Below, one piece after another: positions 13,917 through 42,285 of a stretch of 64,000 nucleotides of DNA. The notes beneath the pieces were generated by a model. That model worked only from the letters and a program-made list of their open reading frames with translations, had not been told where the DNA came from and made no database searches. Where the stretch lies: positions 1-64,000 of the IMG/VR virus record IMGVR_UViG_3300020471_000004; one strand, 5' to 3'. Each line of letters opens with the position of its first letter. Within the stretch, counting starts at the first letter, position 1. Position numbers and translations under genes: made by a program.

Positions 13917-14603
13917 CTATTCCAAGTCCACTACCATCAACAAATGTTTAACTTCGCCTTGAAGCCGTGTCGTGCCTACTTCTACGTCAATACCGCGAAT
14001 GGAACTTTCAACCGTTTCTTCTAACTCTTCTGCCCAGTCACCGAACTCACCTACGCGCAAATGGTTACGCCTACGGTAAGAGCGCAATGTACTAGATACA
14101 TCATAGAAGTGATAGAATTCCCCAGGTAACATTTCTTGTGTCTTGATGAACTTGATACGGTTCATTCCTGGGTATTTAACTTTTGAAAGACGGGAAGTTA
14201 ATCCAGTATTTTCTTTAGGTGCTTTTAAATCTTTAACACGAACCTCTACAGTCTTGGTCCCTTTGCTAGGGTCAAGCTTGTTTTGTTTATCGTGTCCTGC
14301 AGGTGCACCTCTTAAACTATCTTTAACAGACTTACCATCTACCTTACCAGTAAATGTGCGTGAGCGTTTAAGTAAAGCACTCAGTTCTCGTTGAGATATT
14401 TTGAACTTTAGGTCCAGTGCTTCTGCATCGATTAAATAGAAGTTACCGCCACGAATAGGCTTAACTCCAAAAACATGACCTGCTTCTAGAATTAGATCGT
14501 AACTACGGTGGTGTTGTAGAAACTTTGCAGGTCTTTTGCCTAAGAACTTATACCAAGCGCAGCTTTTAACGTCTACAGGTTTTGCCGATAGACTTATAAG
14601 CAT
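13917..14603 (-). CDS. basic hypothetical protein, tagged putative head cargo
   Basis: Starts MLISLSA; N-terminal domain similar to 40585..42285 and 27881..28819. Confidence 0.7.
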   Translation of the reverse strand: MLISLSAKPVDVKSCAWYKFLGKRPAKFLQHHRSYDLILEAGHVFGVKPIRGGNFYLIDAEALDLKFKISQRELSALLKRSRTFTGKVDGKSVKDSLRGAPAGHDKQNKLDPSKGTKTVEVRVKDLKAPKENTGLTSRLSKVKYPGMNRIKFIKTQEMLPGEFYHFYDVSSTLRSYRRRNHLRVGEFGDWAEELEETVESSIRGIDVEVGTTRLQGEVKHLLMVVDLE

Positions 14604-14606
14604 AAC

Positions 14607-14936
14607 TTATCTTCTTTTAGGTTTAGGTAAACGTTGAAGCATCTGTATTTTGCGCTTGTACTCCATATAGAAAGAACGCGCTTCTTTACGTGCTTCTTGA
14701 ATCTCCTGAGGAGAGCCTTCACGATACTTAACTTTATCCAGGCGCGAAAGAATTTTAGAGCGCAAGTTACGAGCTTCACGCTGCATAACTGAATAACGAT
14801 CTTTTTTCTGGATACGCTTACGGTAAGGCCCCCGGCGACGGCGAGGTCGAAAGCGGCGCATACGTCTTTGTGCAGGGTCTACACCTAAATCTTTGTAGTC
14901 AACAGATTCAGATGAAAGGTCAAGATTGATTTTCAT
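14607..14936 (-). CDS. Arg-rich putative DNA-binding internal head protein
   Basis: MKINLDLSSES followed by RRMRRFRPRRRRGPYRKR; AAGGA SD. Confidence 0.65.
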   Translation of the reverse strand: MKINLDLSSESVDYKDLGVDPAQRRMRRFRPRRRRGPYRKRIQKKDRYSVMQREARNLRSKILSRLDKVKYREGSPQEIQEARKEARSFYMEYKRKIQMLQRLPKPKRR

Positions 14937-18298: not shown

Positions 18299-18694
18299 TT
18301 ATTTAAGCTTTAAGCTTAAAGGGGATTTGATTGCCTTAGGCGCACTGTTTGATACAGTCTCAATATCGCCATCATCAAACAACTGTGAGCTAAAGTCAAT
18401 AGCATCTTCGTCATCGCTACGTAAGTCACCTCGGCGTAGAACCCTATGGTTTTCTTCCATTATCTCAGCCATTGCGCTGCTAATAGAATTAAGGTCACCT
18501 TCAGGTGCAGAGTAGGCAAGACTCTGTGCAAGCACTTTACCAGTGTAGTTGTCCTCAAGCAAAGAATCAATAAAGTCTTCGCTATCGGCATTGCTCATAG
18601 CAAGAGCAAACAAATAACTGGCATTTTTAAAGTCTTGTTGTTGATAGGCTATACATGATAAAGCAATCAAGTCTTTTGCATTGTTTTCTTTCAT
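18299..18694 (-). CDS. small acidic head-associated protein
   Basis: 131 aa directly after the MCP; GGAG SD; contains S-x-S sites (LNSISSA, TVSNSA). Confidence 0.7.
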   Translation of the reverse strand: MKENNAKDLIALSCIAYQQQDFKNASYLFALAMSNADSEDFIDSLLEDNYTGKVLAQSLAYSAPEGDLNSISSAMAEIMEENHRVLRRGDLRSDDEDAIDFSSQLFDDGDIETVSNSAPKAIKSPLSLKLK

Positions 18695-18746: not shown

Positions 18747-19826
18747 TTAGATACGCTTACCTTTAGCAACAGAGCGAACGTTACCTACCAAGAAGCTAAT
18801 GCTTTGGCTAATTAACCAACCTTTGTTAGTTTCGCCTTGGTTAGCACCGTCAGTAGGAGTAGAACGGATACCGCGAGTCGAGAACGCTGCGTGGTGTTCA
18901 GGATCAGATACAACGTAGATTTCACCTTTATCAAGAACGCGTTGGTTCTCAGGACGGAAACCGTCGGTCATAAGTTCCATACCGATTAGTGTACCGATTT
19001 TACCGTTCATTACTAGGTCGTACTTAGATACTGGATCTAAGAAAGCGCTGAACTCGCTGTTACCGATAATGTCTTTCCAGAAGTCATTAGAGATAATCGC
19101 TTTAGTAGCTGGTAAGTTCCAACCAGATACTTGTTCAGAAAGTGACGCAAGCATTTTAGGCGTAAGTTCACCAGAAATGTATGAAATGTCGTTAACGCGA
19201 CCAACAGTTGCATCAACAGCACGTTTCCAAATGCGGTCTTCTGCAACCATTACTGCTTCCATTGCCTGGTCGCGAATGTCACGTAGAAGGTCGCCAGATG
19301 ATTGGTCAAGCTCAAGTTGCGATACGCGTACCGCAGACTTAACTTCGTATTCAGCAGGTGTGAACTGACGGTCACGAATTAGCTGGTAACCCATCTGAGT
19401 TGGTGATGTTGATACAACAGCTTGAACTTCGTGGCGGAACATAGGGATACGCGGGTATTCACCTTGTTTAAGGTTGTTACCTACTGCTAGGTTACGCATG
19501 AAGCCTGCACGGTCTGCTTGCTCAACGATACGATCAGAAATCGCAGCACCAAGAGCAGCCCAGTCATCTAGGTTAGAGTTAGCTTGAGCGATCAAATCAC
19601 GGAATTCCTCAGAAGTCATTGCGTCTTCTTGAGGTGCTTCAACGATTTGTCCAGCAGAAGCCATTGACATTAACTTACCAATGTTTTGCATTAGTTCGTT
19701 ACGGTCGTGTGCGTTGATTTCACCGTTTGATGAAAGCGCCTTCATGCCGGAACCAGGTAAAATTAGGTTGTCTAGCGATTCGCCGTTTGCCATTACGTGG
19801 CGGAAGTTACGAGCAGAATGTTTCAT
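18747..19826 (-). CDS. major capsid protein (HK97-fold)
   Basis: 359 aa in scaffold-decoration-MCP order, GGAG SD. R.GFMR.L..L.QG, A.EA.MV.EDR and G.IGTL.G..L pattern typical of jumbo myovirus capsids. Confidence 0.75.
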   Translation of the reverse strand: MKHSARNFRHVMANGESLDNLILPGSGMKALSSNGEINAHDRNELMQNIGKLMSMASAGQIVEAPQEDAMTSEEFRDLIAQANSNLDDWAALGAAISDRIVEQADRAGFMRNLAVGNNLKQGEYPRIPMFRHEVQAVVSTSPTQMGYQLIRDRQFTPAEYEVKSAVRVSQLELDQSSGDLLRDIRDQAMEAVMVAEDRIWKRAVDATVGRVNDISYISGELTPKMLASLSEQVSGWNLPATKAIISNDFWKDIIGNSEFSAFLDPVSKYDLVMNGKIGTLIGMELMTDGFRPENQRVLDKGEIYVVSDPEHHAAFSTRGIRSTPTDGANQGETNKGWLISQSISFLVGNVRSVAKGKRI

Positions 19827-20619: not shown

Positions 20620-22599
20620 TTAGAAGGATTTCATTGCTCTAGAAAGTTTTGATTGGAAGTCAGAAGTTGAAACCGCAGTTGATTGCGACTCCAAAGTTTT
20701 TTCTTTTGGTACAACACGAGGTTGTAAACGTTGCTCTACAGAACTAACAGATTCCTGTCCGTCTTTACGAGCAAAAGAACTAGCAGCAACCATTTCGGCA
20801 ACTTCGTTTTGGAAGTCAGCGGACTTGCTGATAAGTTCCATCGTCTGGTCAACCAACAGCTTGTTGAATGCACCTGCGTTAGCTTCAAACACGTTATCAA
20901 TAAGCTCACGAGCATTATCAATACCTGCAGCCTTCAAGGTACTGGCCAAGCTTGAAATGATTGGGTTAGACTTTCCACGGAACACACCGTTATTCAGTCC
21001 CATGATAGAAGTAGCAAGGGCAGCACCCAGGCGTTCCATCAGTTTAGCATCGCGGTCTTTCTGGGCTTGTTCGTAGCCTGCAATTTTTGCATCCGCTTGT
21101 GCAACGATTTCTTTAGAGATAACCGTTTGCATTGTTTGTTCGTCAAAAGCAATTGACTCGAAACCGAACTGTTTAAGACCTGACTCTACGCCATCGTTAG
21201 CGATTGCTTTTAAGCAAGCTTGGCGGTAAGTAGGTTGATTAAAGATGCCACGTAGATTACCTTCGACATTTGACTCTGATGCAACTGCAACAGGAGTAGC
21301 GCCATGGAAAGCAACCCAACGGTTTTCACCAGCAACAACAGATACATTAGCTAGGCTAACTTGGTCTGCTTGTAAACCGCCTTCGGTAGAAGATGCAACC
21401 GCAGTCATAACGTCAAGAGAAGCAGAAACAGATACAGAGTCAGATTCAAGCTCTTCATCGTCATCGTCATCTTCTTCATCTTCTTCGTCATCTAGACCAT
21501 CAACGTCTTCGTCTTCGTCAGAGTCATCTTCGTCAGAGTCATCTTCGTCTTCGTCAGAGTCATCTTCGTCTTCGTCTTCGTCTTCGTCTTCGTCTTCGTC
21601 AGAAGAAGAGATAACTTCGAAATCATCGTCCAGGTCATCGAACTCGTCATCGTCCAGGTCCGAATCAATGTCGTCAAGGTCGTCAAGGTCGTCATCGTCA
21701 TCTAGATCCATATCCATGTCGTCATCCAACATAATATCATCTAGGTCATCGTCTTCATCCATAAGAAGATCATCGTCCATGTCCATAGAGGCATGTTCAA
21801 GTTCATCTAAAACTTCTGGATCGACAACGGCGGTAGAACAGCTAGGGCACACTGTAATGTCTTCGCTAGAAGAAAGAACGTGCATACCGCATTCTTCTGA
21901 ATCAGCACAAACAAAGTAATGCGCATCAGTTCCGAAACGGTCAGCAGCATCTTGCACTGCACTAGAGTTAGACTCTAATTCCTGCGCTGCAACTTCTTCA
22001 CCGTAGAAAGGACTGTAGTGAACAGAACCGCTAGAGTTAGAAATAAAGCTAACTTGGTTTTCGGTGTCTTCGTAAGCAGAAACAGGAGAATCGCCTGCTA
22101 GAATAGCCAGGTAGTCTTCTTTGGCTTCTTCAAAAGAAGAGGCAACGACAACGATACCTTGCTCGCCTTCAAGCTCTTGAACAAGAGCGCTTTCAGACTC
22201 TAGCTCGTCTTCTAAATCGCGGTCGAAATCTACATCGGTACTGCACGAAGGACAGTTAGATACAGACTCGCAAGCATCTGCGATAATGTGCGTGTTACAT
22301 TCAGAACACATGGTGTAATGAACTGACACTTGGTCTTCTTGGTCGGCACTGCTGGTAACTTCGAGATCAGTATCTAAAACCTTCATTGAGTCTCTGTTAC
22401 CAGACAGAGGATTCAAAAAAGATTTATGCGCACCAGCAACAGTAGCGATAGCAAAAGAACCGTCGGCAGAAGAAAGAACTTCTAGGGACTCTTGTTTAGC
22501 AACCATTGCGTAGTTACGGATAGCTTGTTCTCGGGTACCTGCAGTAACAACAATACCGCCAAAGCTAGGCTGAGTCGGTGATTTTTGTTTTACTGTCAT
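20620..22599 (-). CDS. putative prohead scaffold/core protein
   Basis: 659 aa, very acidic with a D/E tract of about 110 aa, two repeated Cys-containing modules, many S-x-S sites; first gene of the head operon with GAGGAG SD. Confidence 0.65.
   Translation of the reverse strand: MTVKQKSPTQPSFGGIVVTAGTREQAIRNYAMVAKQESLEVLSSADGSFAIATVAGAHKSFLNPLSGNRDSMKVLDTDLEVTSSADQEDQVSVHYTMCSECNTHIIADACESVSNCPSCSTDVDFDRDLEDELESESALVQELEGEQGIVVVASSFEEAKEDYLAILAGDSPVSAYEDTENQVSFISNSSGSVHYSPFYGEEVAAQELESNSSAVQDAADRFGTDAHYFVCADSEECGMHVLSSSEDITVCPSCSTAVVDPEVLDELEHASMDMDDDLLMDEDDDLDDIMLDDDMDMDLDDDDDLDDLDDIDSDLDDDEFDDLDDDFEVISSSDEDEDEDEDEDEDDSDEDEDDSDEDDSDEDEDVDGLDDEEDEEDDDDDEELESDSVSVSASLDVMTAVASSTEGGLQADQVSLANVSVVAGENRWVAFHGATPVAVASESNVEGNLRGIFNQPTYRQACLKAIANDGVESGLKQFGFESIAFDEQTMQTVISKEIVAQADAKIAGYEQAQKDRDAKLMERLGAALATSIMGLNNGVFRGKSNPIISSLASTLKAAGIDNARELIDNVFEANAGAFNKLLVDQTMELISKSADFQNEVAEMVAASSFARKDGQESVSSVEQRLQPRVVPKEKTLESQSTAVSTSDFQSKLSRAMKSF
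21563..21600. repeat. (tcttcg)x6 in-frame microsatellite encoding (ED)n
   Basis: Read directly; part of the larger D/E low-complexity tract at about 21450-21790. Confidence 0.85.
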
Positions 22600-22907: not shown

Positions 22908-24278
22908 TTACTTTGCATCTAAGTCAAGCGAGTAGTAGTCTACTAGTTTGCCTTTAAGTTCTGCGGATACTCCTGATGAAGGCACATCATAGGAAACAAA
23001 CTTAACGCCTCTACCGTAAGCTTTGGTCACAGAAGCTTTCCACTCATTGTAGCTTTGACCTTTATTCTGGCTAGGGTTATCTAGGCGCGAGCTTTTGCCT
23101 GTATTCTTTGTGTCTGGACTACTGCTTTTTGTGCCTGAACGTTTTTTAGCCTGTTCGACTTTTATTTGGCGACTAGTAGGTGTTTTTTCTATAAGCTTTT
23201 CTGCTTTTCTAAGATCCCTTTGCAAAGGACGTATCTCGGCATTTAAGTCTCTAGCCTGTTGGGCTAATTCTTTTTTCTTTTCCTTGTTATCTGTGTTGTC
23301 CATGCGCTGCTTTATGCGCTCTACTTTTTGCTGCAACTTAACTATGTTCTTATACATTTTATAAGTATCAGGCGCTTTTACTGGAGCCTTAGGCTCCCTA
23401 GTTACTCGTGCTTTGCGTGTCTTAGAAGCAGTTTCATTAGGAGATTTCTTGCGTCCCTCAGGCACTTCTTCACCGTTCATAATACCTGCAATACGGCGTG
23501 CAGCTATACGAGGTCCTGCATAGTACTTGCGCATAGGTCCACCGCTAGCAGGCTGGTGGAATACATGCCAGCCAGGTGCAAGCATACCAGGTGAGCGTTT
23601 CTTGCGTCCCATTTTAGAACCTACGTTGCCTTTACCTCTAGCAGGAGCCGCCGATTCAGATTCAATACTTGATACTGAAATAAACGCTTCGTTGCCTCTA
23701 GAACCGTCACCGCGTGAGCTTCTACCGCGAGAATAGTCTACAAGGTCTTGAACAGCTAAAGGTATAGCACGTACATCTGAACATTCGCGGAAAGCAACGT
23801 GAACATTAGATTTAGTTAGTTCAAAAGAGTAGACACCGTCTTCAAAACCGTCATAGTTTATAGAGTAACCGCTAGGTAGCCGCGCTTGTTTAATAGCTTT
23901 ATAGGCGGCTTGGTTGCCAACGTTTGAATTTGAAGTGCTTTCTCTCTCAAAGTCTTCCTCAAAGCTTAGTGCCTCTGCTTCAAGGTCTGTAATAGACTCT
24001 GAGTAAGGACCGTCAGGGTCAATATCCCATAAACCGTCACTTGCTAGTGCCTCCATTTCCCGTTGTGCGAACAGGCGATTCTTCATGCTAGGGGTATACT
24101 TGGCTTCTTTAGATATGCGGAAAATACTAAATAGACCTGTACGGCTTTTTAATACGTAACGTCCTGGTTGAGCAAAAACTACTCGTGCTTTAGGCTTTAC
24201 TGTAGCAAGAGCCTTTTCAATAGTAGCAGGAATAGGGTGCTTAGAACGTGCGCTTTCTGAAAGTATTTGAATATACAT
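22908..24278 (-). CDS. basic multi-segment protein, tagged putative head cargo
   Basis: MYIQILSESA; internal ERESTS and IESESA sites; Lys/Arg-rich coiled coil. Confidence 0.7.
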   Translation of the reverse strand: MYIQILSESARSKHPIPATIEKALATVKPKARVVFAQPGRYVLKSRTGLFSIFRISKEAKYTPSMKNRLFAQREMEALASDGLWDIDPDGPYSESITDLEAEALSFEEDFERESTSNSNVGNQAAYKAIKQARLPSGYSINYDGFEDGVYSFELTKSNVHVAFRECSDVRAIPLAVQDLVDYSRGRSSRGDGSRGNEAFISVSSIESESAAPARGKGNVGSKMGRKKRSPGMLAPGWHVFHQPASGGPMRKYYAGPRIAARRIAGIMNGEEVPEGRKKSPNETASKTRKARVTREPKAPVKAPDTYKMYKNIVKLQQKVERIKQRMDNTDNKEKKKELAQQARDLNAEIRPLQRDLRKAEKLIEKTPTSRQIKVEQAKKRSGTKSSSPDTKNTGKSSRLDNPSQNKGQSYNEWKASVTKAYGRGVKFVSYDVPSSGVSAELKGKLVDYYSLDLDAK

Positions 24279-24293
24279 AGTTAATCCTTTGGT

Positions 24294-25271
24294 CTATTTA
24301 CTACGCTTAGTGCTTTTAGTGCTTTTAGTGCTTTTAGTACTACGGGTGCTTTTAGTACTACGCTCTTTGCGGGTTTTAGACTTAGGGCTTAAAGCATCAA
24401 TCTGTTTTTGGACTTTTTCTTGTAAAGCTTCCCACGCATCAACTGCCTTATCCATTTCTGCTTCAACCTTGTCATACTCTTTATTGAGTTTGTCCAGCTT
24501 TTGTTGAATTTCTTTTTTCTTAGAGCCTTCAGCGTCTCTGAGTTCGTACTCAAGATCATCAATATCATCGGCTAGGTCAATGCTTTTGTCTTCAAGCTCG
24601 GCGACCTTTTCAAACTCCTTGCTTGACTCAACACTTTGGCGCAATTCGTCTATTTGTTTTCTAGCTTTTTCTTTTTCTTCTTTTTCTTTGTACTTTTGAG
24701 GATTGTTGGCTTTATCGGCTTTCTCAAGTTCCTTGTGTTCAGCTTCAAGCTTCTTATATTTCTTTTCGAGCTTCTTCTTGGTCTTTTTAGCAGCAACTCT
24801 TTCTTCGTCTACTTCTTTTTTGTAATACTCGATTTCTTTTTTAGCGTCAGCCACTTCTCCCTTGGCGTATTCTATTTCACTTTCGTCTCCGTCCTCTTCG
24901 GCCTCTTCAAGCTCTTCTTGGGCATCTTCAAGACGTTCTTGGGCATCTTCTAACCTACGTTGGTTTTTAGTATCACCTTCTAGGGCATCTTCGGCTTCAT
25001 CTAACTCGAAACCAAGGTTTTCCATTTTAAGAGCCACAGAATCCAAGCGCTTTTCAATTGATTTAGCAGACTTATCTTTTGTAGTAGAAGCATTGTCCTT
25101 TTGAGCTTGCTTCTTGGTAGTGTTGTCACGTTCTGCCTTTGGTTTAGCTAAACGTTTGGCATGGCTGCTGTTCGGGTACTTTTTTAGGTATTTCTTTTTC
25201 TCAGAAGAACCTAATTTTGCAAACTGCTCAGCAGACAAGCCTGCACTTTCTGAATTAAGAGTAATAATCAT
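24294..25271 (-). CDS. K/E-rich coiled-coil protein, tagged putative head cargo
   Basis: MIITLNSESA; KKYLKKYPNSSHAK motif; (STK)n tail. Confidence 0.7.
   Translation of the reverse strand: MIITLNSESAGLSAEQFAKLGSSEKKKYLKKYPNSSHAKRLAKPKAERDNTTKKQAQKDNASTTKDKSAKSIEKRLDSVALKMENLGFELDEAEDALEGDTKNQRRLEDAQERLEDAQEELEEAEEDGDESEIEYAKGEVADAKKEIEYYKKEVDEERVAAKKTKKKLEKKYKKLEAEHKELEKADKANNPQKYKEKEEKEKARKQIDELRQSVESSKEFEKVAELEDKSIDLADDIDDLEYELRDAEGSKKKEIQQKLDKLNKEYDKVEAEMDKAVDAWEALQEKVQKQIDALSPKSKTRKERSTKSTRSTKSTKSTKSTKRSK
24307..24360. repeat. 9-nt tandem repeat (ttagtgctt-like, about 6 units) encoding an (ST[K/R])n tail
   Basis: Read directly. Confidence 0.8.
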
Positions 25272-25279
25272 GTTTTTTC

Positions 25280-25753
25280 CTAGATTGTTTCATACAAGCG
25301 TTTAAGACCAGCCATCTTTCCTGGGTAACCTTTACGCTGTAACAAATTAAAAAAGTCTACAGGCTTCATGTTGTGCAAGGGATTACTATCTCTAGCAGTA
25401 CCGCGCGGGTGAATATAGTCTTTGACAAATTCATCAAACTCTATTTCGTACTCTACCATACTGTCAACAAACTCCAAGAACTGTTCCCAAAGTTTATCTT
25501 CGTCAGGAGTATTCAGATCCACAAGTTCAAAGGATTTGACCTCGGCAATAGGTAACGCTCGGGGGTATGCCAGTATACCGTGCCTATAGTTTCGAGAGTC
25601 ACGAATACCTGCAAAGCGTTTATCTTTTGCAGCTTTTTCTGCATCGATAAACTCTACAGGCTGGGGGTTTGTAGGCTGTGCCCCTATAGAATAAGGTCTG
25701 AATTTCAGTCCGTAATAGAACTTTTGGTTACTTAATGAAATTAGAAGTTTCAT
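25280..25753 (-). CDS. DarA C-terminal-like domain protein, tagged putative head cargo
   Basis: YYGLKFRPYSIGAQP...RHGILAYPRALPIAEVKSFELV matches my recollection of the DarA_C (defence against restriction A) consensus; starts MKLLISLSN. Confidence 0.65.
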   Translation of the reverse strand: MKLLISLSNQKFYYGLKFRPYSIGAQPTNPQPVEFIDAEKAAKDKRFAGIRDSRNYRHGILAYPRALPIAEVKSFELVDLNTPDEDKLWEQFLEFVDSMVEYEIEFDEFVKDYIHPRGTARDSNPLHNMKPVDFFNLLQRKGYPGKMAGLKRLYETI

Positions 25754-25760
25754 AGATACC

Positions 25761-27434
25761 TCAAATAAGCTTTTCTATGTTAGCTGGCATTCTTAAACCT
25801 AGGCGTTCATAGAAGTCTGCCAAAATAGCAGGGTCAATATAGTTAGCAATAGCAGTAGATATAGTAAGCTTACCGTTATTAAAATGGCCAAGCTCTTTGG
25901 CTACTTTTTGTAAAGCACCTTTTAACCAAGTCTCTGCGTCTTTGTTAGTTACCTGGCGTTTACGAGTAAATAAAGGACACTTTTCAATAATATCTCTTGC
26001 TAGACGTGTACCTTTAAGAGTACGGAATTTGTGAGCAGTAACCCCTTCAGGTAACATAGACTTCAAATATTTGTTTACAGCATTGGCTGTTATACGTCTG
26101 TTACCGAAAGTAAATAGAGGGTCTTTGCGCTTCTTGCCTTCGCTAAGTTGGTCAAGCAGTTCTATAATCAATTTGTTTGTGACAGAATTAGGTTTAAGCA
26201 CATGCTTTTGGACCTGTGCTTTCTTGGCTTCGTACTTTATTTCTCGGTTCTGACCTTTCTTGTAATAGTGACCTGATTGCAGTACAGTCAAACCGTATGT
26301 GGTCTTATCACCTGTCTTGCCTTCACGGGTACCTATACGCGCACTGGTTTGGTACATAACTTCTATAACAAGACACAGCAAGCCTTCTTTGGTTGATATG
26401 CCTTCTGATTTTAGTTTCTGCAACCAACGTCTTCTTACACCAGGCGCTACTTTTTCAAATTCTTCTACAATCTTAAACTTTTTGCTACGTTGCTTAGAGT
26501 TCCACCTTTCGGTGTATACCTTTAGATAGTTTTCAGCAGCAGGGGCCTTATATTCTAAAACATAGGCGTTATCTTTTTTAGGATCGTAGTTAGGATTCAT
26601 GCGAACATCGCCTGCTATACCTTTATTGCTTAACAACAAACCTTTTGAGGTATAGTAAGAAAGAGTATCGTCAATGTAACCAACAAACTGTTCAGGTAGA
26701 TTGTGATGGCGTATGCCTGCATCTTTGATAGCATCAATTACTTCACGGATGTCCAGATACGGCTTACCTGATTGGCGTACATAGTTTACAACAAAGTTTT
26801 TCCATGCTTTATTTACTTCTAGGCTAGCTTTTCGGAATTCAACATAGACAGGATTGTCTTTGTGTTTCTTGCGGAGTTCTTGACTTAGGTGGATAGTGCC
26901 GTCACCACCTAACTTGGTGCTAAGTTTAGAAACCTTTTTAAGTAAACTATCTTGGTCACTTACTTCTAGTTCAAACAGACTTGAAAGAGCTACATCGTTT
27001 AAGTCACTTACTTTGGTCTTTAGAACGTTAATCGCATTCTGCCTAGAAGTTTCTTTAGGAGACGTAGCAATTGTGTAGAACTTTTTGATTATGTCTAGTC
27101 CTGACCTAGATATAAGAGTTTCGTTCTCTATTTTAGCACGTACCTTTTTGTCTCTTACCTGCTTGGCTACTTCATACGCAGAACCTAGAAAGTCTTCGTC
27201 CTCTTCGTGTAAGGTATACCCTTTTAAGAAAAGGCTTGTCATTTCATCGTAAGCTTTTAGGTTAAACTTGTAGTGGGCCATAAACTCACGCCCTTGCTTA
27301 ACCCACTCACGGATGTCGCCAGCTAGGTTATGAGGGAATTTGTATTCAGGACTATCTGAATATGCGACAAGCAGCACCACTTTTGTAAATGCCGTTGCTA
27401 TGTCAGAATTAATTTTTGATAAAGATACTAACAT
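25761..27434 (-). CDS. type IB DNA topoisomerase with long N-terminal extension
   Basis: Catalytic pentad R (SARIG), K (YEAKK), R (AHKFRT), H (ELGH), Y (ANYIDP). Start MLVSLSK at 27434 inferred from the TAATG overlap with the upstream stop. Confidence 0.88.
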   Translation of the reverse strand: MLVSLSKINSDIATAFTKVVLLVAYSDSPEYKFPHNLAGDIREWVKQGREFMAHYKFNLKAYDEMTSLFLKGYTLHEEDEDFLGSAYEVAKQVRDKKVRAKIENETLISRSGLDIIKKFYTIATSPKETSRQNAINVLKTKVSDLNDVALSSLFELEVSDQDSLLKKVSKLSTKLGGDGTIHLSQELRKKHKDNPVYVEFRKASLEVNKAWKNFVVNYVRQSGKPYLDIREVIDAIKDAGIRHHNLPEQFVGYIDDTLSYYTSKGLLLSNKGIAGDVRMNPNYDPKKDNAYVLEYKAPAAENYLKVYTERWNSKQRSKKFKIVEEFEKVAPGVRRRWLQKLKSEGISTKEGLLCLVIEVMYQTSARIGTREGKTGDKTTYGLTVLQSGHYYKKGQNREIKYEAKKAQVQKHVLKPNSVTNKLIIELLDQLSEGKKRKDPLFTFGNRRITANAVNKYLKSMLPEGVTAHKFRTLKGTRLARDIIEKCPLFTRKRQVTNKDAETWLKGALQKVAKELGHFNNGKLTISTAIANYIDPAILADFYERLGLRMPANIEKLI

Positions 27435-31413: not shown

Positions 31414-32217
31414 TTACCTCATTACTGCCATGACTTGGTTATGGTTACTATGGTTTGAAACATAGGCAGGATCTTCTACAGCGCTGTTTTCAAAACCAGT
31501 TATTTGGTGCACATACCTGAAAGCGATCTGGTTTGCATCGTTTACATAAGTAGGCTTTTGTAGAACAGTATGACTACATACATTACGTAAATTATCTTTA
31601 TATACCGTATGTCCACAAATGCTACAGGTGTAAGCTTGATACCACATACCAATACTGAATGTATTTAGGTCCTCTGTTAGAATGCGGTTAGCAAGAACAG
31701 GGTCTTTGGTTCGGTCAAAAGCAAGTAACTGAATAATACGAGCATGGTTGCCACGGAACTGAGGTAACGACTTCATGTATACGTCAAGAATAACACCTTT
31801 AGCTTTGGTAATATCCTTGTTGTCATGCTCTTGGTGAGTAGGTTTTCCTTTCCACGTTTTGTATGCCAGCATACCTAAATCAGGACGAAAGCGTAGTGCC
31901 TCTTGAGTAGACAAACAATCACCGTTGGTGTTAGGTACGTCAGTTATAACACTAGGCACAGGCACCATCACGTAGTCACGAAGATTAGGGCTTATCTGAT
32001 AATGTTCAGATGCCATTGGTAACCAAGTGTTTGCATCTATTACCATGCTTTCTGAGGCGCCTGTTGCACTAGGCTTAAAAGTGATTTCGTTTGATTTACC
32101 AATGTCTTTTAACTCGATAGCTTTGTGGCGTACGTCACGTTTGGTAACATCGAAACTAGAGCTTTCAAAGCTGTTCTGTTCATTGGGAATAATAATGTCT
32201 TTTAAATCAAGTTTCAT
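31414..32217 (-). CDS. prohead maturation protease (HK97/assemblin superfamily) with Zn-ribbon insert
   Basis: NTNGD, GKPTHQEH (His), KGVILD, FSIGM (Ser), CSICG..CSH, FENSAVEDPA. Confidence 0.75.
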   Translation of the reverse strand: MKLDLKDIIIPNEQNSFESSSFDVTKRDVRHKAIELKDIGKSNEITFKPSATGASESMVIDANTWLPMASEHYQISPNLRDYVMVPVPSVITDVPNTNGDCLSTQEALRFRPDLGMLAYKTWKGKPTHQEHDNKDITKAKGVILDVYMKSLPQFRGNHARIIQLLAFDRTKDPVLANRILTEDLNTFSIGMWYQAYTCSICGHTVYKDNLRNVCSHTVLQKPTYVNDANQIAFRYVHQITGFENSAVEDPAYVSNHSNHNQVMAVMR

Positions 32218-32219
32218 AA

Positions 32220-33461
32220 TTAACCTACTCGGGTTACTTCTATAACTAACTGGTTATTAGCGTTACGACCTGCGTTAACGTTAATATCTTGAGTAGAAAC
32301 TCTGCCACCGCGCGAAGCACCTTTGTTTACGAAAGTGAAAGAACCTACTTCACCTTTCTCGAAATCAGGAGTTGGTTTTGACGTAAGAGAAGACAGACTG
32401 TTTGTACTAATAGCTTTGGCTACTTTCTTAGCTATAGCTGCACTAGTATTGTATTCAACAGAGAATGAAGTATTGCCTATACTATAAGAAGAAGGCAATC
32501 TTTTTGAATTGGTTATCTTTAGGTATAGCTGACCTTTGCCTTTTGAAAATCTGCCTGCACTTTGGCCTTTTCTGCTAGGTCTAGGCTTACGAGTAGTAGG
32601 ATCTCTGGTAATAGTTTCTTTACGAGCAGGCACATCGTAATCACCTAGTTCTACGTCACCGCTAGTTTGGGCATTACGTATAAGGTCTAGTGAGAAACGA
32701 GTAGGTTGCTTAGGTTCAAAAATTGAAGTGATAGCAAGAGGAGTCTGTTTGCCTGACTTGAGCATACTAGCAGCCTGTTTAGGTGTAACTCGGATCATGC
32801 GACCATCACCAAACGTGCCACCACGGCTCTTGAATGCAGTACCTTGCTTCCAGCCGTCTGTAGAAAAGGCAGGAGATGCAAAATCAATACCGTATTTAGA
32901 TTTGATAGAACTAACAAAGCCAAGTTTTTTGCTTTCAAGCAACGACACTAGGTCTTTTATCAAATCATTCAGGTTGAAAGGATAGCGCTGACCAGGTTTA
33001 AGCGTCTTCAAGAATTCTTCGGTTGCTGCCAAGTTAGAAAGAATTTGGACATTCTTTTTGGTCATGCTGGTACGAGTGTTTGCACCGAACAAGGCAATAG
33101 CCGCCAACTTAGCCAGATCCGCAGAGTTGTCTTGGGCAACCTTCTTGGGGCTAGGTTTGCGTGTAGGCTTTTTAGTACCAGTAGCTGCATCTTCCGATAA
33201 GATTTTATGGTCACGTTTAAGTTGGTTAAACTTGTTTCGCGTTATCTTGAACTTCCAGTACTTGTTTAGCTCCTCGTCAAAGTCAAACAGGAATATACCT
33301 TTAGGTGAATTAGAAAGGTAGAAAATATCGCCACGTCTTAGAGCCAGTTCGTGAGTAGCATCTTCTATTTCAATTTTCTTTTTAGCTTTCATCTGAATAG
33401 ACCCTTTAATAGGCGCTTTAACTTTAGTTGCAGATGAACTTTCTAGTAGATTTATTTTCAT
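32220..33461 (-). CDS. basic protein, tagged putative head cargo
   Basis: MKINLLESSSA; Lys-rich. Confidence 0.7.
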   Translation of the reverse strand: MKINLLESSSATKVKAPIKGSIQMKAKKKIEIEDATHELALRRGDIFYLSNSPKGIFLFDFDEELNKYWKFKITRNKFNQLKRDHKILSEDAATGTKKPTRKPSPKKVAQDNSADLAKLAAIALFGANTRTSMTKKNVQILSNLAATEEFLKTLKPGQRYPFNLNDLIKDLVSLLESKKLGFVSSIKSKYGIDFASPAFSTDGWKQGTAFKSRGGTFGDGRMIRVTPKQAASMLKSGKQTPLAITSIFEPKQPTRFSLDLIRNAQTSGDVELGDYDVPARKETITRDPTTRKPRPSRKGQSAGRFSKGKGQLYLKITNSKRLPSSYSIGNTSFSVEYNTSAAIAKKVAKAISTNSLSSLTSKPTPDFEKGEVGSFTFVNKGASRGGRVSTQDINVNAGRNANNQLVIEVTRVG

Positions 33462-34828
33462 AACATGTTCCTGTTAATCGTATGCTTTACCCAAGTGCAA
33501 CATTCTGAATAAGTTTGCCTAATAGGGTTAATTAAAGTAAGTTGGTTAGAGTTTACTACAGTATACGGTTCTTTTTCGCTGCGACCTGTCCGGAAAGCAC
33601 TCTCAGTAAAACCGTCATAAAGTTTCGCTACCCAGCTACGTGTGTTTGCTCCTGTACCCTTGATTTTAGGGTCAGATTCAATACGACCAATATGGTCACC
33701 GCCATACATTATATCGTACTTGGTTCTTTCGGCATCAGTCAGCTTACGTTGAGAAGGACATACTCTAAAACTAATACGGGGCCTAGTGGCCGATTCAGAA
33801 TCGAGGCTATCTAGTTCACTAGGTATATCTATGTATTCTTCTTTGTCATCCTCAAGAAACTTATCAATATCTTCTTTACTAGGAACAAACTTCTCCTGTT
33901 CCATATCGTGACGTATCTCCAGTAGACCTATCTTTTTGGACAAAGTATCAAAGTCTATGCCTGTTAACCAATCCATGTAGTGTTTGACAAAACGTTCCAT
34001 GGTAGGGTTTGTTTCAGGGTCAGACAAGTCTTCTTCGTATTCTTCATCCTCTTCTTCAGGTTCTTCTGCACTAAGGCTTGACCATCTAGAAAGAGATACA
34101 CGATCTAACCAAGCATCAAATTCCTGCTTGTACTCGTCTTGGGGAGTAAGTAGGCGTGATACACTGTTAGACTCTAGTTTTTGCTTGGAATACTCTTGAA
34201 GGTCTTTGTAGTTAGAAGGGCCTAAGAAAGCACTTAGCAATACTTTGCTTACGCTTTTGCCAATCTTTTTCCAGCGACCTTGTCCTAAAGTATTCTCATT
34301 GACAGCATCTAACAGCTTTAACGCAGAGCGACCGCCTCTGCGGTCACTGTCTTGTGCATCTTTGGCACTATATTTACCTTTAAGAATCTTACCGGCAAAG
34401 CCGTTGAACTCTCTACGACCTTGTGGTGAAAACTTGCTGTCCATAACCTGGACAACTTTCGTAAAGCTATCTTTTATTTTCTTAAAGTTTTCTTTCATGT
34501 CCATGCGTACAGCAGGAGCGTTTACTTCAAGACGGTCAGTTTCTTCCTGTACAAGAGCTGCTTCTTGGGCTCTAATCTCACGAGACTTAGGTAACTGCTC
34601 TTTCTTAACAGGTTTCGCAGGTTTCGCTTTAGGTCGAGCAGCTTTACGAGTGGTCTTGTTAGAAGGTTTAGCTTTAGGCTTTTTAGGCTCATTGATTCTA
34701 AGCTTACCTGATTTAACACCTTTAGCGTATTTGCTATTAGGGTGCTTTTCTATGTAAGCTTTTCTTCTAGCTGGACCTGCCTTTTTCCACCAGTTAGATT
34801 CTTGTGCAGATAAGGATATAAGTGTCAT
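33458..34828 (-). CDS. multi-segment protein, tagged putative head cargo
   Basis: Start MTLISLSA at 34828 from the ATGA overlap with the upstream stop; WWKK..YIEKHPNSKYAK; internal LESNS, SSLSA, LDSESA. Confidence 0.7.
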   Translation of the reverse strand: MTLISLSAQESNWWKKAGPARRKAYIEKHPNSKYAKGVKSGKLRINEPKKPKAKPSNKTTRKAARPKAKPAKPVKKEQLPKSREIRAQEAALVQEETDRLEVNAPAVRMDMKENFKKIKDSFTKVVQVMDSKFSPQGRREFNGFAGKILKGKYSAKDAQDSDRRGGRSALKLLDAVNENTLGQGRWKKIGKSVSKVLLSAFLGPSNYKDLQEYSKQKLESNSVSRLLTPQDEYKQEFDAWLDRVSLSRWSSLSAEEPEEEDEEYEEDLSDPETNPTMERFVKHYMDWLTGIDFDTLSKKIGLLEIRHDMEQEKFVPSKEDIDKFLEDDKEEYIDIPSELDSLDSESATRPRISFRVCPSQRKLTDAERTKYDIMYGGDHIGRIESDPKIKGTGANTRSWVAKLYDGFTESAFRTGRSEKEPYTVVNSNQLTLINPIRQTYSECCTWVKHTINRNML

Positions 34829-39946: not shown

Positions 39947-40582
39947 TTAGTAAGGCAAACCTGCTAAACTTCTACCAGTAATGAACTTGTAGAATTCTTT
40001 AGATGGAGGTACGCCTGCACGTAGGTAAGTTCTAACGCCTTGCGGCCAGCGCCATTTATCTAAAGAGTATTCTCCTGAACCTGCATTGCCTCCTGTCCAG
40101 CGATTGTGGGCATCACCTTTATTACGGGTTAAGCGAGCTTCTTTTTGCTTTAAAGTAAGCTGACGTAAGAAATCTGCTTTGTCGTAGCCTCTAACATCCA
40201 TTGCAACAGGGAAAGGCAGTTTACCTCTTGCAGAAATCGAAGGTCTCCAGTACCCGAAGACTTTTCTAGGGAACGCTTTGCCTGCATTAAGCTCTTTAAA
40301 CAGTGCTTTACTGTGCGTACCAGGCTTACGTGCAAGTTTTATTGAAGCAGAATCATCTTTTAGCTTCTGGGCTTTGGCTTTACCTACAGCCTTCTTCGGT
40401 TTAAACTTGACTGTTATCTGCACTTCACCACCAAGGTTGTAACCTACCTTAAAGTTCTTGGCAGTTAAGGAACGTGGAAGCTCTGTTTTGTCACCTAATG
40501 CCTCAAGCAACGTAGTTTGAAACTGTTCTGTGCTTTTGGCTATTTTGTCTACAGCACTATTGGATTGTAATTGTACCTTCAT
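39947..40582 (-). CDS. basic protein, tagged putative head cargo
   Basis: MKVQLQSNSA; C-terminal GSGEY..WRWPQG..Y..VPPSKEFYKFI domain. Confidence 0.7.
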   Translation of the reverse strand: MKVQLQSNSAVDKIAKSTEQFQTTLLEALGDKTELPRSLTAKNFKVGYNLGGEVQITVKFKPKKAVGKAKAQKLKDDSASIKLARKPGTHSKALFKELNAGKAFPRKVFGYWRPSISARGKLPFPVAMDVRGYDKADFLRQLTLKQKEARLTRNKGDAHNRWTGGNAGSGEYSLDKWRWPQGVRTYLRAGVPPSKEFYKFITGRSLAGLPY

Positions 40583-40584
40583 AC

Positions 40585-42285
40585 CTAACTCGCAATTGGT
40601 TCATTTGACTTATCGTACATATCACGTTTGTTGTAATACTCGGTAAATTCTTTAGGGTTAAGTTTACGCAAACGTTTAGCTTGCTGCTCTATTGTTGCTT
40701 TTTTCCGAGTATCGAATCGGATAGTCTGGTAGTTACCATCATCGGCGCCTATGTCATAGACTTTGTATACTGTGATATTCTCGTTCTTTTTAAGAGGATA
40801 AATATCTAAGATAACAAACTCTCTTTTTTCAGTTTCGTCTTTATCAAACTGAATAACATCGCCTTCTTCAAACGGTTCCTCTTTTTCAGGTTCTTGTTCA
40901 TCCGAATCTTCCTCTGATTCCTCTTGGTCGTCTTCATCTTCGGATTCCTCCTCAGTTTCTTCCTCAAGGTCGTCTTCGTAATCTTCGTCATCCTCGTCAT
41001 AGTCAGCAGAGTCTAAAGCTTCTTCTTGTTCAGCTTCTTCGTTTGCTTCTTCATAGGTAAGGTCTTCTTCGTCCTCATCCTCTTCATCAATGTCGAGTTC
41101 ATCTTCTTCATCGAGGTCATCTAGATCTAGGTCATCGTCTTCGTCATCGTCTTTTGCGATTTGGACAGAACGACCTTTCCTCCGAGCTTCTTCCAGTTCT
41201 TCATCAAATATCTCTTCTACTGCTTTGGTATCAGCCTCAGGATCTACAATCTCATCTTCTTCTACCTCAGCATCCTGGTCCTCGTCATCTAAGTCAACGT
41301 CATCGATAGTATCAACGTCAATATCAAAATCGTCATCTTCCTCTAGATCAATGTTATTGAACTTACGAGCAGCAGGAGTTTTTTGTTCCATTTGATCACG
41401 TAAATACTCTTCAGGATTCTTCAAGTCTACAGGAGCATAGTCTTTAGGAACAGTAGGTTCTTGTTCAAGAACTTCACGTATTCTGCGTTTTTCTTCTTCA
41501 CGTTCTTTGCGTAGGCGTTCCTTTTCTTTCTCGATTGCCTGACGTTTTTCTTCGCGTTGCTTTTCTCTAAGAGCTTTAGCTTGTTCACGTTGCTTGGCTT
41601 TAGCACTTGATACTTTGCGTTGTTGCTCTTGTGCAATTTCTTCAAGGGTTACTTTACCTCTTAACCAATTTGCACGAGGCAAAATAGCACTTGCTTCTAC
41701 CATAGCATCGTAGGTATCTGAAGGTATATTCCAAAAAGAACCGTCATCGAATACAACTACACCACCTCGGGCTTGTTTCATAAAGCGAAGACCGAACTTT
41801 GTACCTTTAGGAATTTCAAAGCCTTTCTTGCTGGTCTTGTTGTACTTGAACCTAGTATCTTTGAGTTTACGCCATTGGTAATTACTGAAATCAACTCCGT
41901 TCTTAGACTCTTGTTTGACTTTGTTTTGAGGCTTAAACCTCTGAGCCATATAGTCCACAGATTTAGGAACGTTAATTCGTATAGCGCGTTGTCTGCCTCC
42001 GCCTCTCTTGTCTTGAATAGGAGGCATACGGCGTTTTTTCTTAGAGCGTTCTTCTAAGTAATTCAAGTCGCGCTCGTCAATAGTATGCGCGTAATTGTAA
42101 GTATCAGGAAAAATAAGATAGAACTTATTACCTCTAATAGGTTTAATTCCGAATACAGCACCCCGTTCTACACGAGGCGCCTTTTTGTTGCTTACTAGAG
42201 TTCTAGCTCTAGGGCCGTTGTATTCGTACCACTTGTAATTAGGTAAATCACTAAAAACAACAGTAGCACTTTCTGATATTAGCAT
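40585..42285 (-). CDS. bipolar basic/acidic protein, tagged putative head/core protein
   Basis: MLISESA; two copies of the shared beta domain, coiled coil, long D/E tract. Confidence 0.7.
   Translation of the reverse strand: MLISESATVVFSDLPNYKWYEYNGPRARTLVSNKKAPRVERGAVFGIKPIRGNKFYLIFPDTYNYAHTIDERDLNYLEERSKKKRRMPPIQDKRGGGRQRAIRINVPKSVDYMAQRFKPQNKVKQESKNGVDFSNYQWRKLKDTRFKYNKTSKKGFEIPKGTKFGLRFMKQARGGVVVFDDGSFWNIPSDTYDAMVEASAILPRANWLRGKVTLEEIAQEQQRKVSSAKAKQREQAKALREKQREEKRQAIEKEKERLRKEREEEKRRIREVLEQEPTVPKDYAPVDLKNPEEYLRDQMEQKTPAARKFNNIDLEEDDDFDIDVDTIDDVDLDDEDQDAEVEEDEIVDPEADTKAVEEIFDEELEEARRKGRSVQIAKDDDEDDDLDLDDLDEEDELDIDEEDEDEEDLTYEEANEEAEQEEALDSADYDEDDEDYEDDLEEETEEESEDEDDQEESEEDSDEQEPEKEEPFEEGDVIQFDKDETEKREFVILDIYPLKKNENITVYKVYDIGADDGNYQTIRFDTRKKATIEQQAKRLRKLNPKEFTEYYNKRDMYDKSNEPIAS

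What the first reader, a model, noticed from the sequence alone, without database searches (positions are those of the whole stretch)
20620..22599. Scaffold carries many copies of the same S-x-S motif, suggesting a Ser/Ala-directed maturation protease
Seen: LEVLSSA, LEVTSSA, LESESA, VVASS, FISNSS, LESNSSA, VLSSS, LEHAS, VISSS, LESDSVSVSAS, AVASS, VAVASES, VAASS, QESVSS, LESQS in one 659-aa acidic protein. The MCP has MKALSS near residue 30, and 18299 has NSISSA and VSNSA. Established: scaffolds are shredded at repeated protease sites; T4 gp21 and phiKZ gp175 cut after Glu, herpes assemblin cuts Ala-Ser. Inference: the protease at 31414..32217 cuts after small residues ([E/hydrophobic]-[S/A]-x-[S/A]), closer to assemblin than to T4.
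Basis: partly seen in the sequence, partly recalled or inferred. Interest (0 to 1): 0.72.

Follow-up and report, generated by a model that had tools for sequence, protein, structure and literature searches.

The report
Small-residue protease motif in jumbo-phage scaffold
A jumbo phage's acidic head-core protein, its capsid protein, its head protease and about twenty other proteins carry the same short Ser/Ala signal, which suggests that this T4-type head protease cuts next to small residues rather than after glutamate as its studied relatives do.

Summary
All 15 quoted strings are in the 659-aa acidic protein (20620-22599, minus strand). The refined motif is hydrophobic-x-[S/A/V]-x-S-[S/A/T/V/N]. 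It occurs 12 times outside the D/E tract against 2.7 expected, the highest density in the 232.7-kb genome.

It is a family trait. In 79 homologues the motif averages 13.2 copies against 4.1 expected. T4-type [LI]xE and phiKZ-type [SAG]xE are not enriched. Glu is not conserved at orthologous sites, while the two small positions are.

The same signal forms very short N-terminal leaders on at least 14 other ORFs, many without any Glu. It also sits at three conserved places in the capsid protein's N-terminal 94 residues and at the protease's own N-terminus.

The protease is structurally a T4 gp21 relative (Z 10.1; herpes assemblin 6.3). It resembles assemblin only in its likely specificity.

The one experimental anchor is phage G. 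Its homologous capsid protein is cut after Ala27, within a small-x-small context.

The exact scissile bond is not shown. I favour the bond after the second small residue. The scaffold role is likely, not proven. I rate it a new variant of a known kind.

The parts
20620..22599 (-). 659-aa acidic protein (pI 4.05), the putative prohead core or scaffold protein. Its family, phrog_20988, is labelled 'ATPase', but the protein has no Walker A motif.
21445..21804 (-). Asp/Glu tract, residues 266-385, 70% D+E
22468..22485 (-). motif copy LEVLSS (residues 39-44)
22348..22365 (-). motif copy LEVTSS (residues 79-84); the position is conserved in homologues (Ser 53 of 64 at the anchor)
22186..22203 (-). 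motif copy LESESA (residues 133-138)
21961..21978 (-). motif copy LESNSS (residues 208-213); relatives have [LVI]-[EQ]-[AS]-L-S-S nearby
21604..21621 (-). motif copy FEVISS (residues 327-332), inside the acidic tract
21433..21450 (-). motif copy LESDSV (residues 384-389), at the end of the acidic tract
20677..20694 (-). motif copy LESQST (residues 636-641), the best conserved site. In 64 homologues position 3 is S43/A20/T1, position 5 is S42/A22, and Glu at position 2 occurs in only 28.
18747..19826 (-). major capsid protein (phrog_2522; remote homologue of phage G gp27, PDB 6wkk)
19728..19745 (-). capsid protein site 1, MKALSS (residues 28-33), within the conserved A-L-S-x-S-T-G-E-F-N-A block
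19653..19673 (-). capsid protein site 2, residues 52-58; consensus M-x-[AS]-x-[AS]-S-G
19545..19562 (-). capsid protein site 3, W89-A-A-L-G93|A94 (W, L and G invariant in 50 sequences). It aligns with the mapped phage G cut A27|Q28.
18476..18493 (-). LNSISS in the 131-aa acidic protein downstream of the capsid gene; conserved as F-V-S-L-S, V-T-A-L-S-S and V-Q-A-L-S-A in relatives
31414..32217 (-). head maturation protease (phrog_18299) with a T4 gp21-like fold. H131, S188 and E243 are invariant.
32152..32169 (-). the protease's own N-terminal motif FESSSF (residues 17-22). S19 and S21 are at least 90% conserved. Probable self-processing site.
31570..31626 (-). Cys198, Cys201, Cys214, His216: an invariant zinc-ribbon-like insert in the protease
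14583..14603 (-). leader MLISLSA of a KMPT-N domain protein (13917-14603)
14901..14936 (-). leader MKINLDLSSESV of a 109-aa very basic protein
24249..24278 (-). leader MYIQILSESA of a 456-aa basic protein
25242..25271 (-). leader MIITLNSESA of a 325-aa Lys/Glu-rich protein
25727..25753 (-). leader MKLLISLSN of a 157-aa protein; weak match to phrog_1926, 'released from the phage upon host infection'
27414..27434 (-). leader MLVSLSK at the internal ATG (residue 13 of the listed ORF) of a eukaryotic-type topoisomerase IB
33429..33461 (-). leader MKINLLESSSA of a 413-aa protein
34805..34828 (-). leader MTLISLSA at the internal ATG (residue 10) of the 465-aa ORF
40553..40582 (-). leader MKVQLQSNSA of a 211-aa protein
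42265..42285 (-). leader MLISESA of a 566-aa KMPT-N domain protein

Best explanation
The window belongs to a 232.7-kb jumbo myovirus of the PaBG / NCTB / Lu11 / Erwinia-Dickeya group.

Its head maturation protease (31414-32217) has the T4 gp21 fold. The probable catalytic residues are His131, Ser188 and Glu243. The protease recognises a short signal: a hydrophobic residue at position 1 or 2, a small residue (Ser, sometimes Ala or Val) at position 3, any residue at position 4, a small residue (Ser, Ala or Gly) at position 5, and usually another small residue at position 6.

I infer that it cuts next to a small residue, most likely after position 5. That gives [S/A](P3)-x(P2)-[S/A/G](P1)|small(P1'). 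It does not cut after Glu, as T4 gp21, phiKZ gp175 and SPN3US gp245 do.

The 659-aa acidic protein just upstream of the capsid gene carries 13 copies of the signal. It is most likely the prohead core or scaffold protein, cut into pieces of roughly 14-150 residues so that it can leave the head.

The same signal is also used to:
- remove 5-12-residue leaders from at least 14 other proteins, which play a part analogous to T4 capsid-targeting leaders; these include a topoisomerase IB and two KMPT-N proteins;
- trim the capsid protein's N-terminal region at up to three sites, the last after Gly93;
- process the protease's own N-terminus.

Shown: the motif, its enrichment, its conservation, its positions and the protease fold. 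Inferred: that it is cleaved, by this enzyme, at that bond, and that the protein acts as a scaffold.
For: 1. Enrichment in the protein: 12 copies against 2.66 expected outside the D/E tract, the top density in the genome.
2. Enrichment in the family: in 79 homologues the motif averages 13.2 copies against 4.1 expected, with 71 of 79 at z>2. [LI]xE is 7.8 against 7.7 and [SAG]xE is 14.7 against 20.9.
3. Positive control: the same test on T4 gp22 recovers [LI]xE (16 against 5.7, z 5.0) and finds none of the small-residue motif.
4. Orthologous sites keep the small residues, not Glu. At site 636, position 3 is S43/A20/T1, position 5 is S42/A22, and Glu at position 2 occurs in 28 of 64.
5. Leaders: the strict motif lies within the first 12 residues of 11 ORFs against 1.8+-1.3 expected, and within the first 20 residues of 17 ORFs against 3.2. 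Many leaders have no Glu at all (MLISLSA, MKLLISLSN, MKVQLQSNSA). Shine-Dalgarno-like sequences precede these starts. Relatives have the same leaders, and Lu11 uses Ala in place of Ser.
6. The protease N-terminus carries hydrophobic-x-S-x-S-F in most of the 36 N-termini listed from the 42 homologues. S19 and S21 are at least 90% conserved.
7. The capsid protein has three conserved motif-like sites.
8. Experimental anchor: the phage G capsid protein goes from 282 to 255 residues by N-terminal sequencing (PMC5646251). That places the cut at RVALA|QAMA, and the masses match. Phage G has homologues of both the capsid protein and the protease.
9. PaBG's capsid protein loses about 20% of its mass, and gp80 and gp81 run in several bands. 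The orthologue of this protein, gp82, is not among the 14 abundant virion proteins, while its neighbours gp80, gp81 and gp83 are.
10. Protease fold: T4 gp21 at Z 10.1.
11. Gene order protease ... acidic protein - virion protein - capsid protein is conserved.
Against: - No cleavage has been mapped in this phage or in any close relative I could find.
- The phage G anchor is one site in a 24%-identical protein, and A25-L26-A27-Q28-A29 fits both registers.
- Seven of the scaffold copies are preceded by Leu-Glu, so a cut after Glu is not excluded for those copies.
- The protein has two conserved zinc-ribbon-like modules, unusual for a scaffold, and some motif copies (for example H-V-L-S-S at residues 240-244) sit inside them and may be structural.
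- Several leader-bearing ORFs are paralogues, so the counts are not fully independent.
- Shuffling ignores local composition.
- The protease has no Pfam match and no significant profile match to T4 gp21.
Confidence: 0.6

Rival explanations
1. The protease keeps the T4/phiKZ habit of cutting after Glu (L-E|S or S-E|S-A), and the Ser/Ala residues are only a preference on the primed side.
For: Seven copies in the protein are L-E-[S/V/H], against 1.0 expected. Several leaders contain S-E-S-A. The enzyme has the gp21 fold, and every studied gp21-type enzyme cuts after Glu (PMC5694885).
Against: Many leaders have no Glu. Glu at position 2 is present in only 28 of 64 homologues at the best conserved site, while both small positions are fully conserved. 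[LI]xE and [SAG]xE are not enriched in 79 homologues. The capsid motif in this phage (MKALSS) has no Glu. The phage G capsid protein is cut after Ala.
Confidence: 0.1
2. The motif is real and is cleaved, but the 659-aa protein is not a scaffold. It would be an internal head or ejection protein (as in the phiKZ inner body), or a zinc-ribbon nucleic-acid-binding protein whose fragments stay in the virion.
For: There are two conserved C-x2-C...C-P-x-C modules and a conserved C-terminal domain. Jumbo phages package many processed internal proteins (PMC5694885).
Against: The gene sits directly before the capsid gene in every relative. The protein is extremely acidic, has the top motif density, and is absent from the PaBG list of abundant virion proteins.
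Confidence: 0.22
3. The Ser-rich strings are not protease sites. They would be flexible linkers, or O-glycosylation sites for the family-2 glycosyltransferase encoded in the head module.
For: The GT2 gene 34825-36003 is conserved in the head module of the relatives. The protein is 12% Ser.
Against: Ala and Gly freely replace Ser at the conserved positions, and they cannot be O-glycosylated. The motif sits at the extreme N-terminus of many ORFs and of the protease itself. The reversed motif is not enriched at N-termini (6 against 16).
Confidence: 0.05
4. The signal is cut by another enzyme of the module, for example the SprT-like zinc metallopeptidase (27881-28819, HELAH), not by the gp21-like serine protease.
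For: A HExxH protein and two KMPT-N ('metallopeptidase N-terminal fusion') proteins lie in the same module. Iyer et al. note SprT-like peptidases in this phage subgroup.
Against: The motif is conserved at the N-terminus of the serine protease across most of its homologues, as expected for self-processing. Phage G shows a cut after Ala.
Confidence: 0.07

Closest known systems
T4 gp21 prohead protease with the gp22 scaffold and the capsid-targeting leaders of internal proteins
   Same: The protease fold matches (Z 10.1, 147 of 165 residues aligned). There is an acidic core protein encoded before the capsid gene that is dense in the enzyme's motif. Short N-terminal leaders sit on packaged proteins, and the capsid protein has an N-terminal propeptide (PMC5694885).
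   Different: T4 cuts after Glu in [L/I]-x-E. Here Glu is dispensable and two small residues are conserved. The leaders are shorter (5-12 residues). The protease carries a zinc-ribbon-like insert and gives no Pfam or profile match to gp21. The core protein is 659 aa with zinc-ribbon-like modules, whereas gp22 is 269 aa.
phiKZ gp175 / SPN3US gp245 prohead proteases (motif S/A/G-x-E or A-x-E)
   Same: These are also jumbo-phage, gp21-type enzymes that process many head proteins. They take a small residue at P3 and any residue at P2. Under my preferred register, this phage keeps the same small P3.
   Different: Their P1 is Glu; here it is inferred to be Ser, Ala or Gly. [SAG]xE is depleted, not enriched, in the scaffold family.
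Herpesvirus assemblin (cut at V/L/I-x-Ala|Ser)
   Same: It belongs to the same broad fold superfamily and cuts after a small residue with a small P1'.
   Different: The structural match is weaker (Z 6.3, 4.9 and 3.2). Its Ser-His-His triad is not evident here. This is not a close relative.
Phage G gp19 protease and gp27 capsid protein
   Same: Both the capsid protein (E 2.7e-10) and the protease (same Ser motif and Cys/His insert) are homologous. Its capsid protein is cut after Ala27 in a small-x-small context.
   Different: It is a very distant phage of Gram-positive hosts, only one site is known, and its N-terminal propeptide is 27 residues rather than about 93.

Membership tests
T4 gp21-type prohead serine protease (MEROPS/Pfam S77) | gp21 / assemblin-like fold | tested here: met
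   The AF2 model has pLDDT 84.9. The best PDB match is 5jbl at Z 10.1, rmsd 3.0, 147 residues aligned. The best Foldseek hit is also 5jbl, but weak (E 0.045).
T4 gp21-type prohead serine protease (MEROPS/Pfam S77) | sequence match to the family model | tested here: not met
   No Pfam family at E up to 10 except a chance hit. hhalign of the 42-sequence profile against T4 gp21 gave probability 0.5%.
T4 gp21-type prohead serine protease (MEROPS/Pfam S77) | His, Ser and an acidic residue conserved in that order | tested here: inconclusive
   H131, S188, E243 and D168 are invariant in 42 homologues. The local motifs resemble T4's ELNH, VSSRG and GVD, but no residue-level structural mapping was available.
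T4 gp21-type prohead serine protease (MEROPS/Pfam S77) | cleavage C-terminal to Glu | tested here: not met
   This is indirect. Glu-type motifs are not enriched, many leaders lack Glu, Glu is not conserved at orthologous sites, and phage G is cut after Ala. No direct cleavage data exist.
Herpesvirus assemblin (S21) | close structural similarity and a Ser-His-His triad | tested here: inconclusive
   Z is 6.3 (VZV), 4.9 (HCMV) and 3.2 (KSHV), all below the gp21 match. The second His was not identified.
Prohead scaffold or core protein (T4 gp22-like role) | encoded next to the capsid gene, downstream of the protease | tested here: met
   The same order is found in NCTB, PaBG, Y3, JA29 and Lu11.
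Prohead scaffold or core protein (T4 gp22-like role) | many copies of the protease's own motif | tested here: met
   13 copies, the top density in the genome. The T4 gp22 control behaves the same way with its own motif.
Prohead scaffold or core protein (T4 gp22-like role) | present in proheads, absent from mature virions | not testable with these tools
   The only hint is that PaBG gp82 is not among the 14 abundant virion bands.
ATPase (label of phrog_20988) | Walker A / P-loop | tested here: not met
   No [AG]xxxxGK[ST] motif and no Pfam domain.
T4-type capsid-targeting leader | short N-terminal peptide ending in the protease motif, shared by several packaged proteins | tested here: met
   11 ORFs have the motif within their first 12 residues, against 1.8 expected. 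The same leaders occur in relatives.
T4-type capsid-targeting leader | the leader is needed for packaging and is removed in the head | not testable with these tools
   Needs proteomics and fusion experiments.

The most novel reading that the evidence does not exclude
A large clade of gp21-type head proteases (over 200 metagenomic homologues, covering the PaBG/NCTB/Lu11/Erwinia-Dickeya phages and reaching phage G) has switched its P1 preference from Glu to Ser/Ala/Gly. The resulting 5-12-residue hydrophobic-x-S-x-S leader would then be a portable tag. From sequence alone it would list the whole set of proteins packaged into these heads, including a eukaryotic-type topoisomerase IB and metallopeptidase-associated (KMPT-N) proteins.
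Probability: 0.4. Interest if true: 0.62.

Novelty: new variant of a known kind. Interest (0 to 1): 0.5.

Why it matters
Every gp21-type head protease studied so far (T4, phiKZ, 201phi2-1, SPN3US) cuts after Glu. A widespread sister clade that cuts next to Ser, Ala or Gly would show how specificity shifts within one fold, towards what herpesvirus assemblin does.

In practice the motif gives testable predictions:
- the mature N-termini of the capsid protein and about 20 other proteins;
- which proteins are packaged, for example a topoisomerase IB;
- a correction to a family currently labelled 'ATPase' in phage annotation.

One virion mass-spectrometry run with a semi-specific search would settle these predictions.

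Tried and rejected
- Complex prediction of the protease (residues 25-255) with scaffold residues 120-160 gave no answer (score 0.02). It is evidence neither for nor against binding.
- Sequence search of the protease against solved structures found nothing relevant.
- Pfam found nothing for the protease or the acidic protein.
- hhalign of the protease profile against T4 gp21 was not significant and aligned an irrelevant stretch.
- Unbiased k-mer enrichment over the whole proteome was swamped by the Asp/Glu, Gly-Pro and Lys-Ala repeats and did not help.
- Literature: the PaBG paper reports processing but maps no site. The Dickeya jumbo-phage paper has no proteomics. The Aeromonas and phage G genome papers give no cleavage sites. 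The phiRSL1 structure paper and the phage G 6.1 A paper are not held in the library. The Erwinia Y3 paper did not turn up in a search.
- I considered reading the motif as L-E|S (cut after Glu) because of the seven Leu-Glu copies. I rejected it as the general rule for the reasons given under the first rival.
- I considered MKALSS as the mature capsid N-terminus. I consider it less likely than a later site.
Full report
**Observation.** The interval 20620-22599 is one ORF on the minus strand, as is every gene in this part of the window.
- It encodes 659 residues with pI 4.05. A 120-residue tract is 70% Asp+Glu.
So are MKALSS in the capsid protein, NSISSA and VSNSA in the 131-aa neighbour, and FSIGM in the protease.
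- S-x-S occurs 18 times against 9.4+-2.7 in shuffles.

**Context.** The genome held for this window is a single 232,692-bp contig.
- The nearest phage record is Phage NCTB (58-76% protein identity). Next come PaBG, Lu11, HRDY3 and the Erwinia/Dickeya jumbo phages.
- The PaBG authors treat these as one clade (PMC7412058). Iyer et al. place them in jumbo-phage subgroup 2.2, which uses a gp21-type prohead peptidase (PMC7824862).
- In transcription order, the acidic protein is followed by a virion structural protein (phrog_16710), the major capsid protein (phrog_2522) and a 131-aa acidic protein. The head maturation protease (phrog_18299) lies upstream.
- In Y3 and JA29 only one gene separates the protease from the acidic protein. 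In this phage about 9 kb of extra genes are inserted there.
- The 'ATPase' label of phrog_20988 has no support: there is no Walker A motif and no Pfam domain.

**The motif, refined.** Listing every E-S-x-S and S-E-S in the genome showed two things. The copies cluster in head-module ORFs, and the shared frame is hydrophobic-x-[S/A/V]-x-S-[S/A/T/V/N].
- Outside the acidic tract the protein has 12 copies against 2.66+-1.59 expected. None of 5000 shuffles reached that number. The strict form has 7 copies against 1.0.
- At 1.97 copies per 100 residues it has the highest density of all ORFs of 100 aa or more among the 261 called.
- As a positive control I ran the same test on T4's scaffold gp22. It recovers the known T4 motif [L/I]-x-E (16 against 5.7, z 5.0) and finds none of the small-residue motif.
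- In the present protein [L/I]-x-E is depleted (2 against 7.3).

**Conservation.**
- In a six-phage alignment the copies fall at matching places. Ser and Ala interchange, while Glu is often replaced by Gln or lost.
- In 79 homologues from phages and metagenomes, the motif with Ser or Ala at position 5 averages 13.2 copies against 4.1 expected, and 71 of 79 have z>2. [L/I]-x-E sits at expectation (7.8 against 7.7). [S/A/G]-x-E is depleted (14.7 against 20.9).
- At the best conserved site (residue 636), 64 aligned homologues show V/L/M at position 1 in 48 of 64; E28/Q15/T12 at position 2; S43/A20/T1 at position 3; a variable position 4; S42/A22 at position 5; and S49 at position 6.

**The same signal elsewhere.**
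- *Short leaders.* The strict motif lies within the first 12 residues of 11 ORFs (1.8+-1.3 expected) and within the first 20 residues of 17 ORFs (3.2 expected). The reversed motif shows no such excess.
  - Typical leaders are MLISLSA, MLISESA, MYIQILSESA, MIITLNSESA, MKLLISLSN, MKINLLESSSA and MKVQLQSNSA. Several contain no Glu.
  - Purine-rich Shine-Dalgarno-like stretches precede these starts. Two long ORFs have an internal ATG that creates the same leader. One of these is supported by where the PHROG alignment begins.
  - NCTB, Y3 and JA29 have the same leaders. Lu11 writes them with Ala (MIISLAAAAA). PaBG gp83, which carries such a leader, is a virion protein.
  - Leader-bearing proteins include a eukaryotic-type topoisomerase IB and two KMPT-N domain proteins.
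  - Some leader-bearing ORFs are paralogues, so the count overstates independence. At least ten unrelated families are still involved.
- *The protease itself.* In most of the 36 N-termini listed from the 42 aligned homologues, the N-terminus reads hydrophobic-x-S-x-S-F-[D/S]-[I/L/V]-G, after a variable stretch of 0-20 residues. S19 and S21 are at least 90% conserved. This looks like a self-processing site.
- *The capsid protein.* In 50 aligned sequences it has three conserved motif-like sites:
  - A30-L31-S-x-S-T-G-E-F-N-A;
  - M53-x-[A/S]-x-[A/S]57-S-G;
  - W89-A-[A/S]-L92-G93-[A/S], with W, L and G invariant.
- *The 131-aa neighbour.* Its LNSISS is conserved as a small-x-small site in relatives.

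**The protease.**
- The AlphaFold model is confident (pLDDT 84.9).
- An exhaustive structural comparison puts T4 gp21 first (Z 10.1, rmsd 3.0, 147 residues). VZV, HCMV and KSHV assemblins follow at Z 6.3, 4.9 and 3.2. Foldseek also ranks gp21 first, but weakly.
- Invariant residues are H131, S188 (in FSIGM), D168, E243 and a Cys198/Cys201/Cys214/His216 cluster.
- By local similarity to T4's ELNH, VSSRG and GVD motifs, I infer a triad of H131, S188 and E243.
- There is no Pfam match and no significant profile match to gp21. So this is a gp21-like enzyme by fold and genomic role, not by sequence model.

**Where is the cut?** This is inference. Three arguments speak against a cut after Glu: the Glu-free leaders, the non-conservation of Glu, and the lack of enrichment of Glu-type motifs.
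- The one experimental anchor is phage G. Its capsid protein is a detectable homologue (E 2.7e-10), and its gp19 protease shares the Ser motif and the Cys/His insert.
- Hua et al. report by N-terminal sequencing that the phage G capsid protein goes from 282 to 255 residues and from 31.2 to 28.2 kDa (PMC5646251). On the sequence this is RVALA|QAMA, and the masses match. The cut therefore follows Ala in a small-x-small context.
- That site aligns with W89-A-A-L-G93|A94 here. This fits hydrophobic-x-small-x-small|small.
- Cutting there removes 25% of the mass. Site 2 would remove 16% and site 1 would remove 9%.
- PaBG's capsid protein loses 'about 20%' and runs below a 34.8-kDa band. So MKALSS is probably an intermediate site, not the final one.
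- I prefer the register [S/A](P3)-x(P2)-[S/A/G](P1)|small(P1'). It keeps a variable P2 and a small P1', as in T4 and assemblin, and a small P3, as in phiKZ and SPN3US.
- A cut after the first small residue, with the hydrophobic residue at P3, is not excluded. The phage G sequence A-L-A-Q-A fits both registers.

**Is the protein a scaffold?**
- For: its position before the capsid gene in every relative, its extreme acidity, the highest motif density, predicted fragments of 14-150 residues, and its absence from PaBG's abundant virion bands while its neighbours are present.
- Against: two conserved zinc-ribbon-like modules and a conserved C-terminal domain. These would also suit a processed internal protein.
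- I put the scaffold or core role at about 0.6-0.65.

**Comparison and novelty.**
- The system works like T4's gp21/gp22/leader system and like phiKZ-type processing. The inferred specificity differs: it resembles assemblin's Ala|Ser rule.
- The papers I could read state that T4, phiKZ, 201phi2-1 and SPN3US all cut after Glu. I found no description of a cleavage motif for the PaBG group.
- I therefore rate it a new variant of a known kind, of moderate interest.

**Limits.**
- ORFs were called by a simple longest-ORF rule.
- Shuffles ignore local composition.
- There are no proteomic data for this phage.
- The phage G anchor is a single site in a distant homologue.
- The complex prediction gave no answer.

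Noticed in passing
window 25761-27470 (-): A eukaryotic-type DNA topoisomerase IB (PF01028, E 1e-19). An internal ATG at residue 13 gives it the leader MLVSLSK, and PaBG's orthologue starts MHTSLSA. It may be packaged in the head, as poxvirus topoisomerase IB is packaged in cores.
   Followed up: partly
window 34825-36003 (-): A family-2 glycosyltransferase gene lies inside the head module and is conserved there in NCTB, Y3, JA29 and Lu11. Virion glycosylation is possible.
   Followed up: partly
window 13917-14603, 40585-42285, 27881-28819 (-): A paralogue family with a KMPT-N domain (PF20294) directly after the leader. The third member lacks the Ser leader but has a HELAH zinc-peptidase motif (SprT-like).
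   Followed up: partly
window 14607-14936 (-): A 109-aa protein that is extremely Arg-rich after its leader (RRMRRFRPRRRRG). It is a candidate DNA-condensing internal head protein. NCTB has the same gene.
   Followed up: no
window 24294-25271, 33458-34855; genome 125559-126314: Three leader-bearing proteins share a K-K-Y-L-x-x-x-P-N-S-like motif about 25-35 residues from the start. They appear to be another paralogue family of unknown function.
   Followed up: no
window 14607, 27881, 28835, 30863, 31414, 32220 (ORF lower coordinates; all on the minus strand): Six head-module ORFs begin with MK[I/L][D/N][L/V]. This shared N-terminal pentapeptide is unexplained.
   Followed up: no
window 31570-31626 (-): The protease has an invariant Cys-x2-Cys ... 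Cys-x-His insert after the catalytic Ser. It is shared with phage G gp19. T4 gp21, at 212 aa, is shorter than this 267-aa protease, and I saw no such Cys cluster in it.
   Followed up: partly
window 19877-20587 (-): A virion structural protein (phrog_16710; orthologue of PaBG gp81, seen in several gel bands). It sits between the acidic protein and the capsid gene, where phage G has its decoration protein gp26.
   Followed up: no
window 21245-21919 (+): A 224-aa Ser-rich antisense ORF. It is the mirror image of the Asp/Glu tract and is almost certainly not a gene.
   Followed up: yes
window 20620-22599 (-), residues 95-122 and 228-257: Two repeated modules with C-x2-C ... C-P-x-C-S, conserved in all six aligned phages. 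They look like zinc ribbons inside a putative scaffold.
   Followed up: partly
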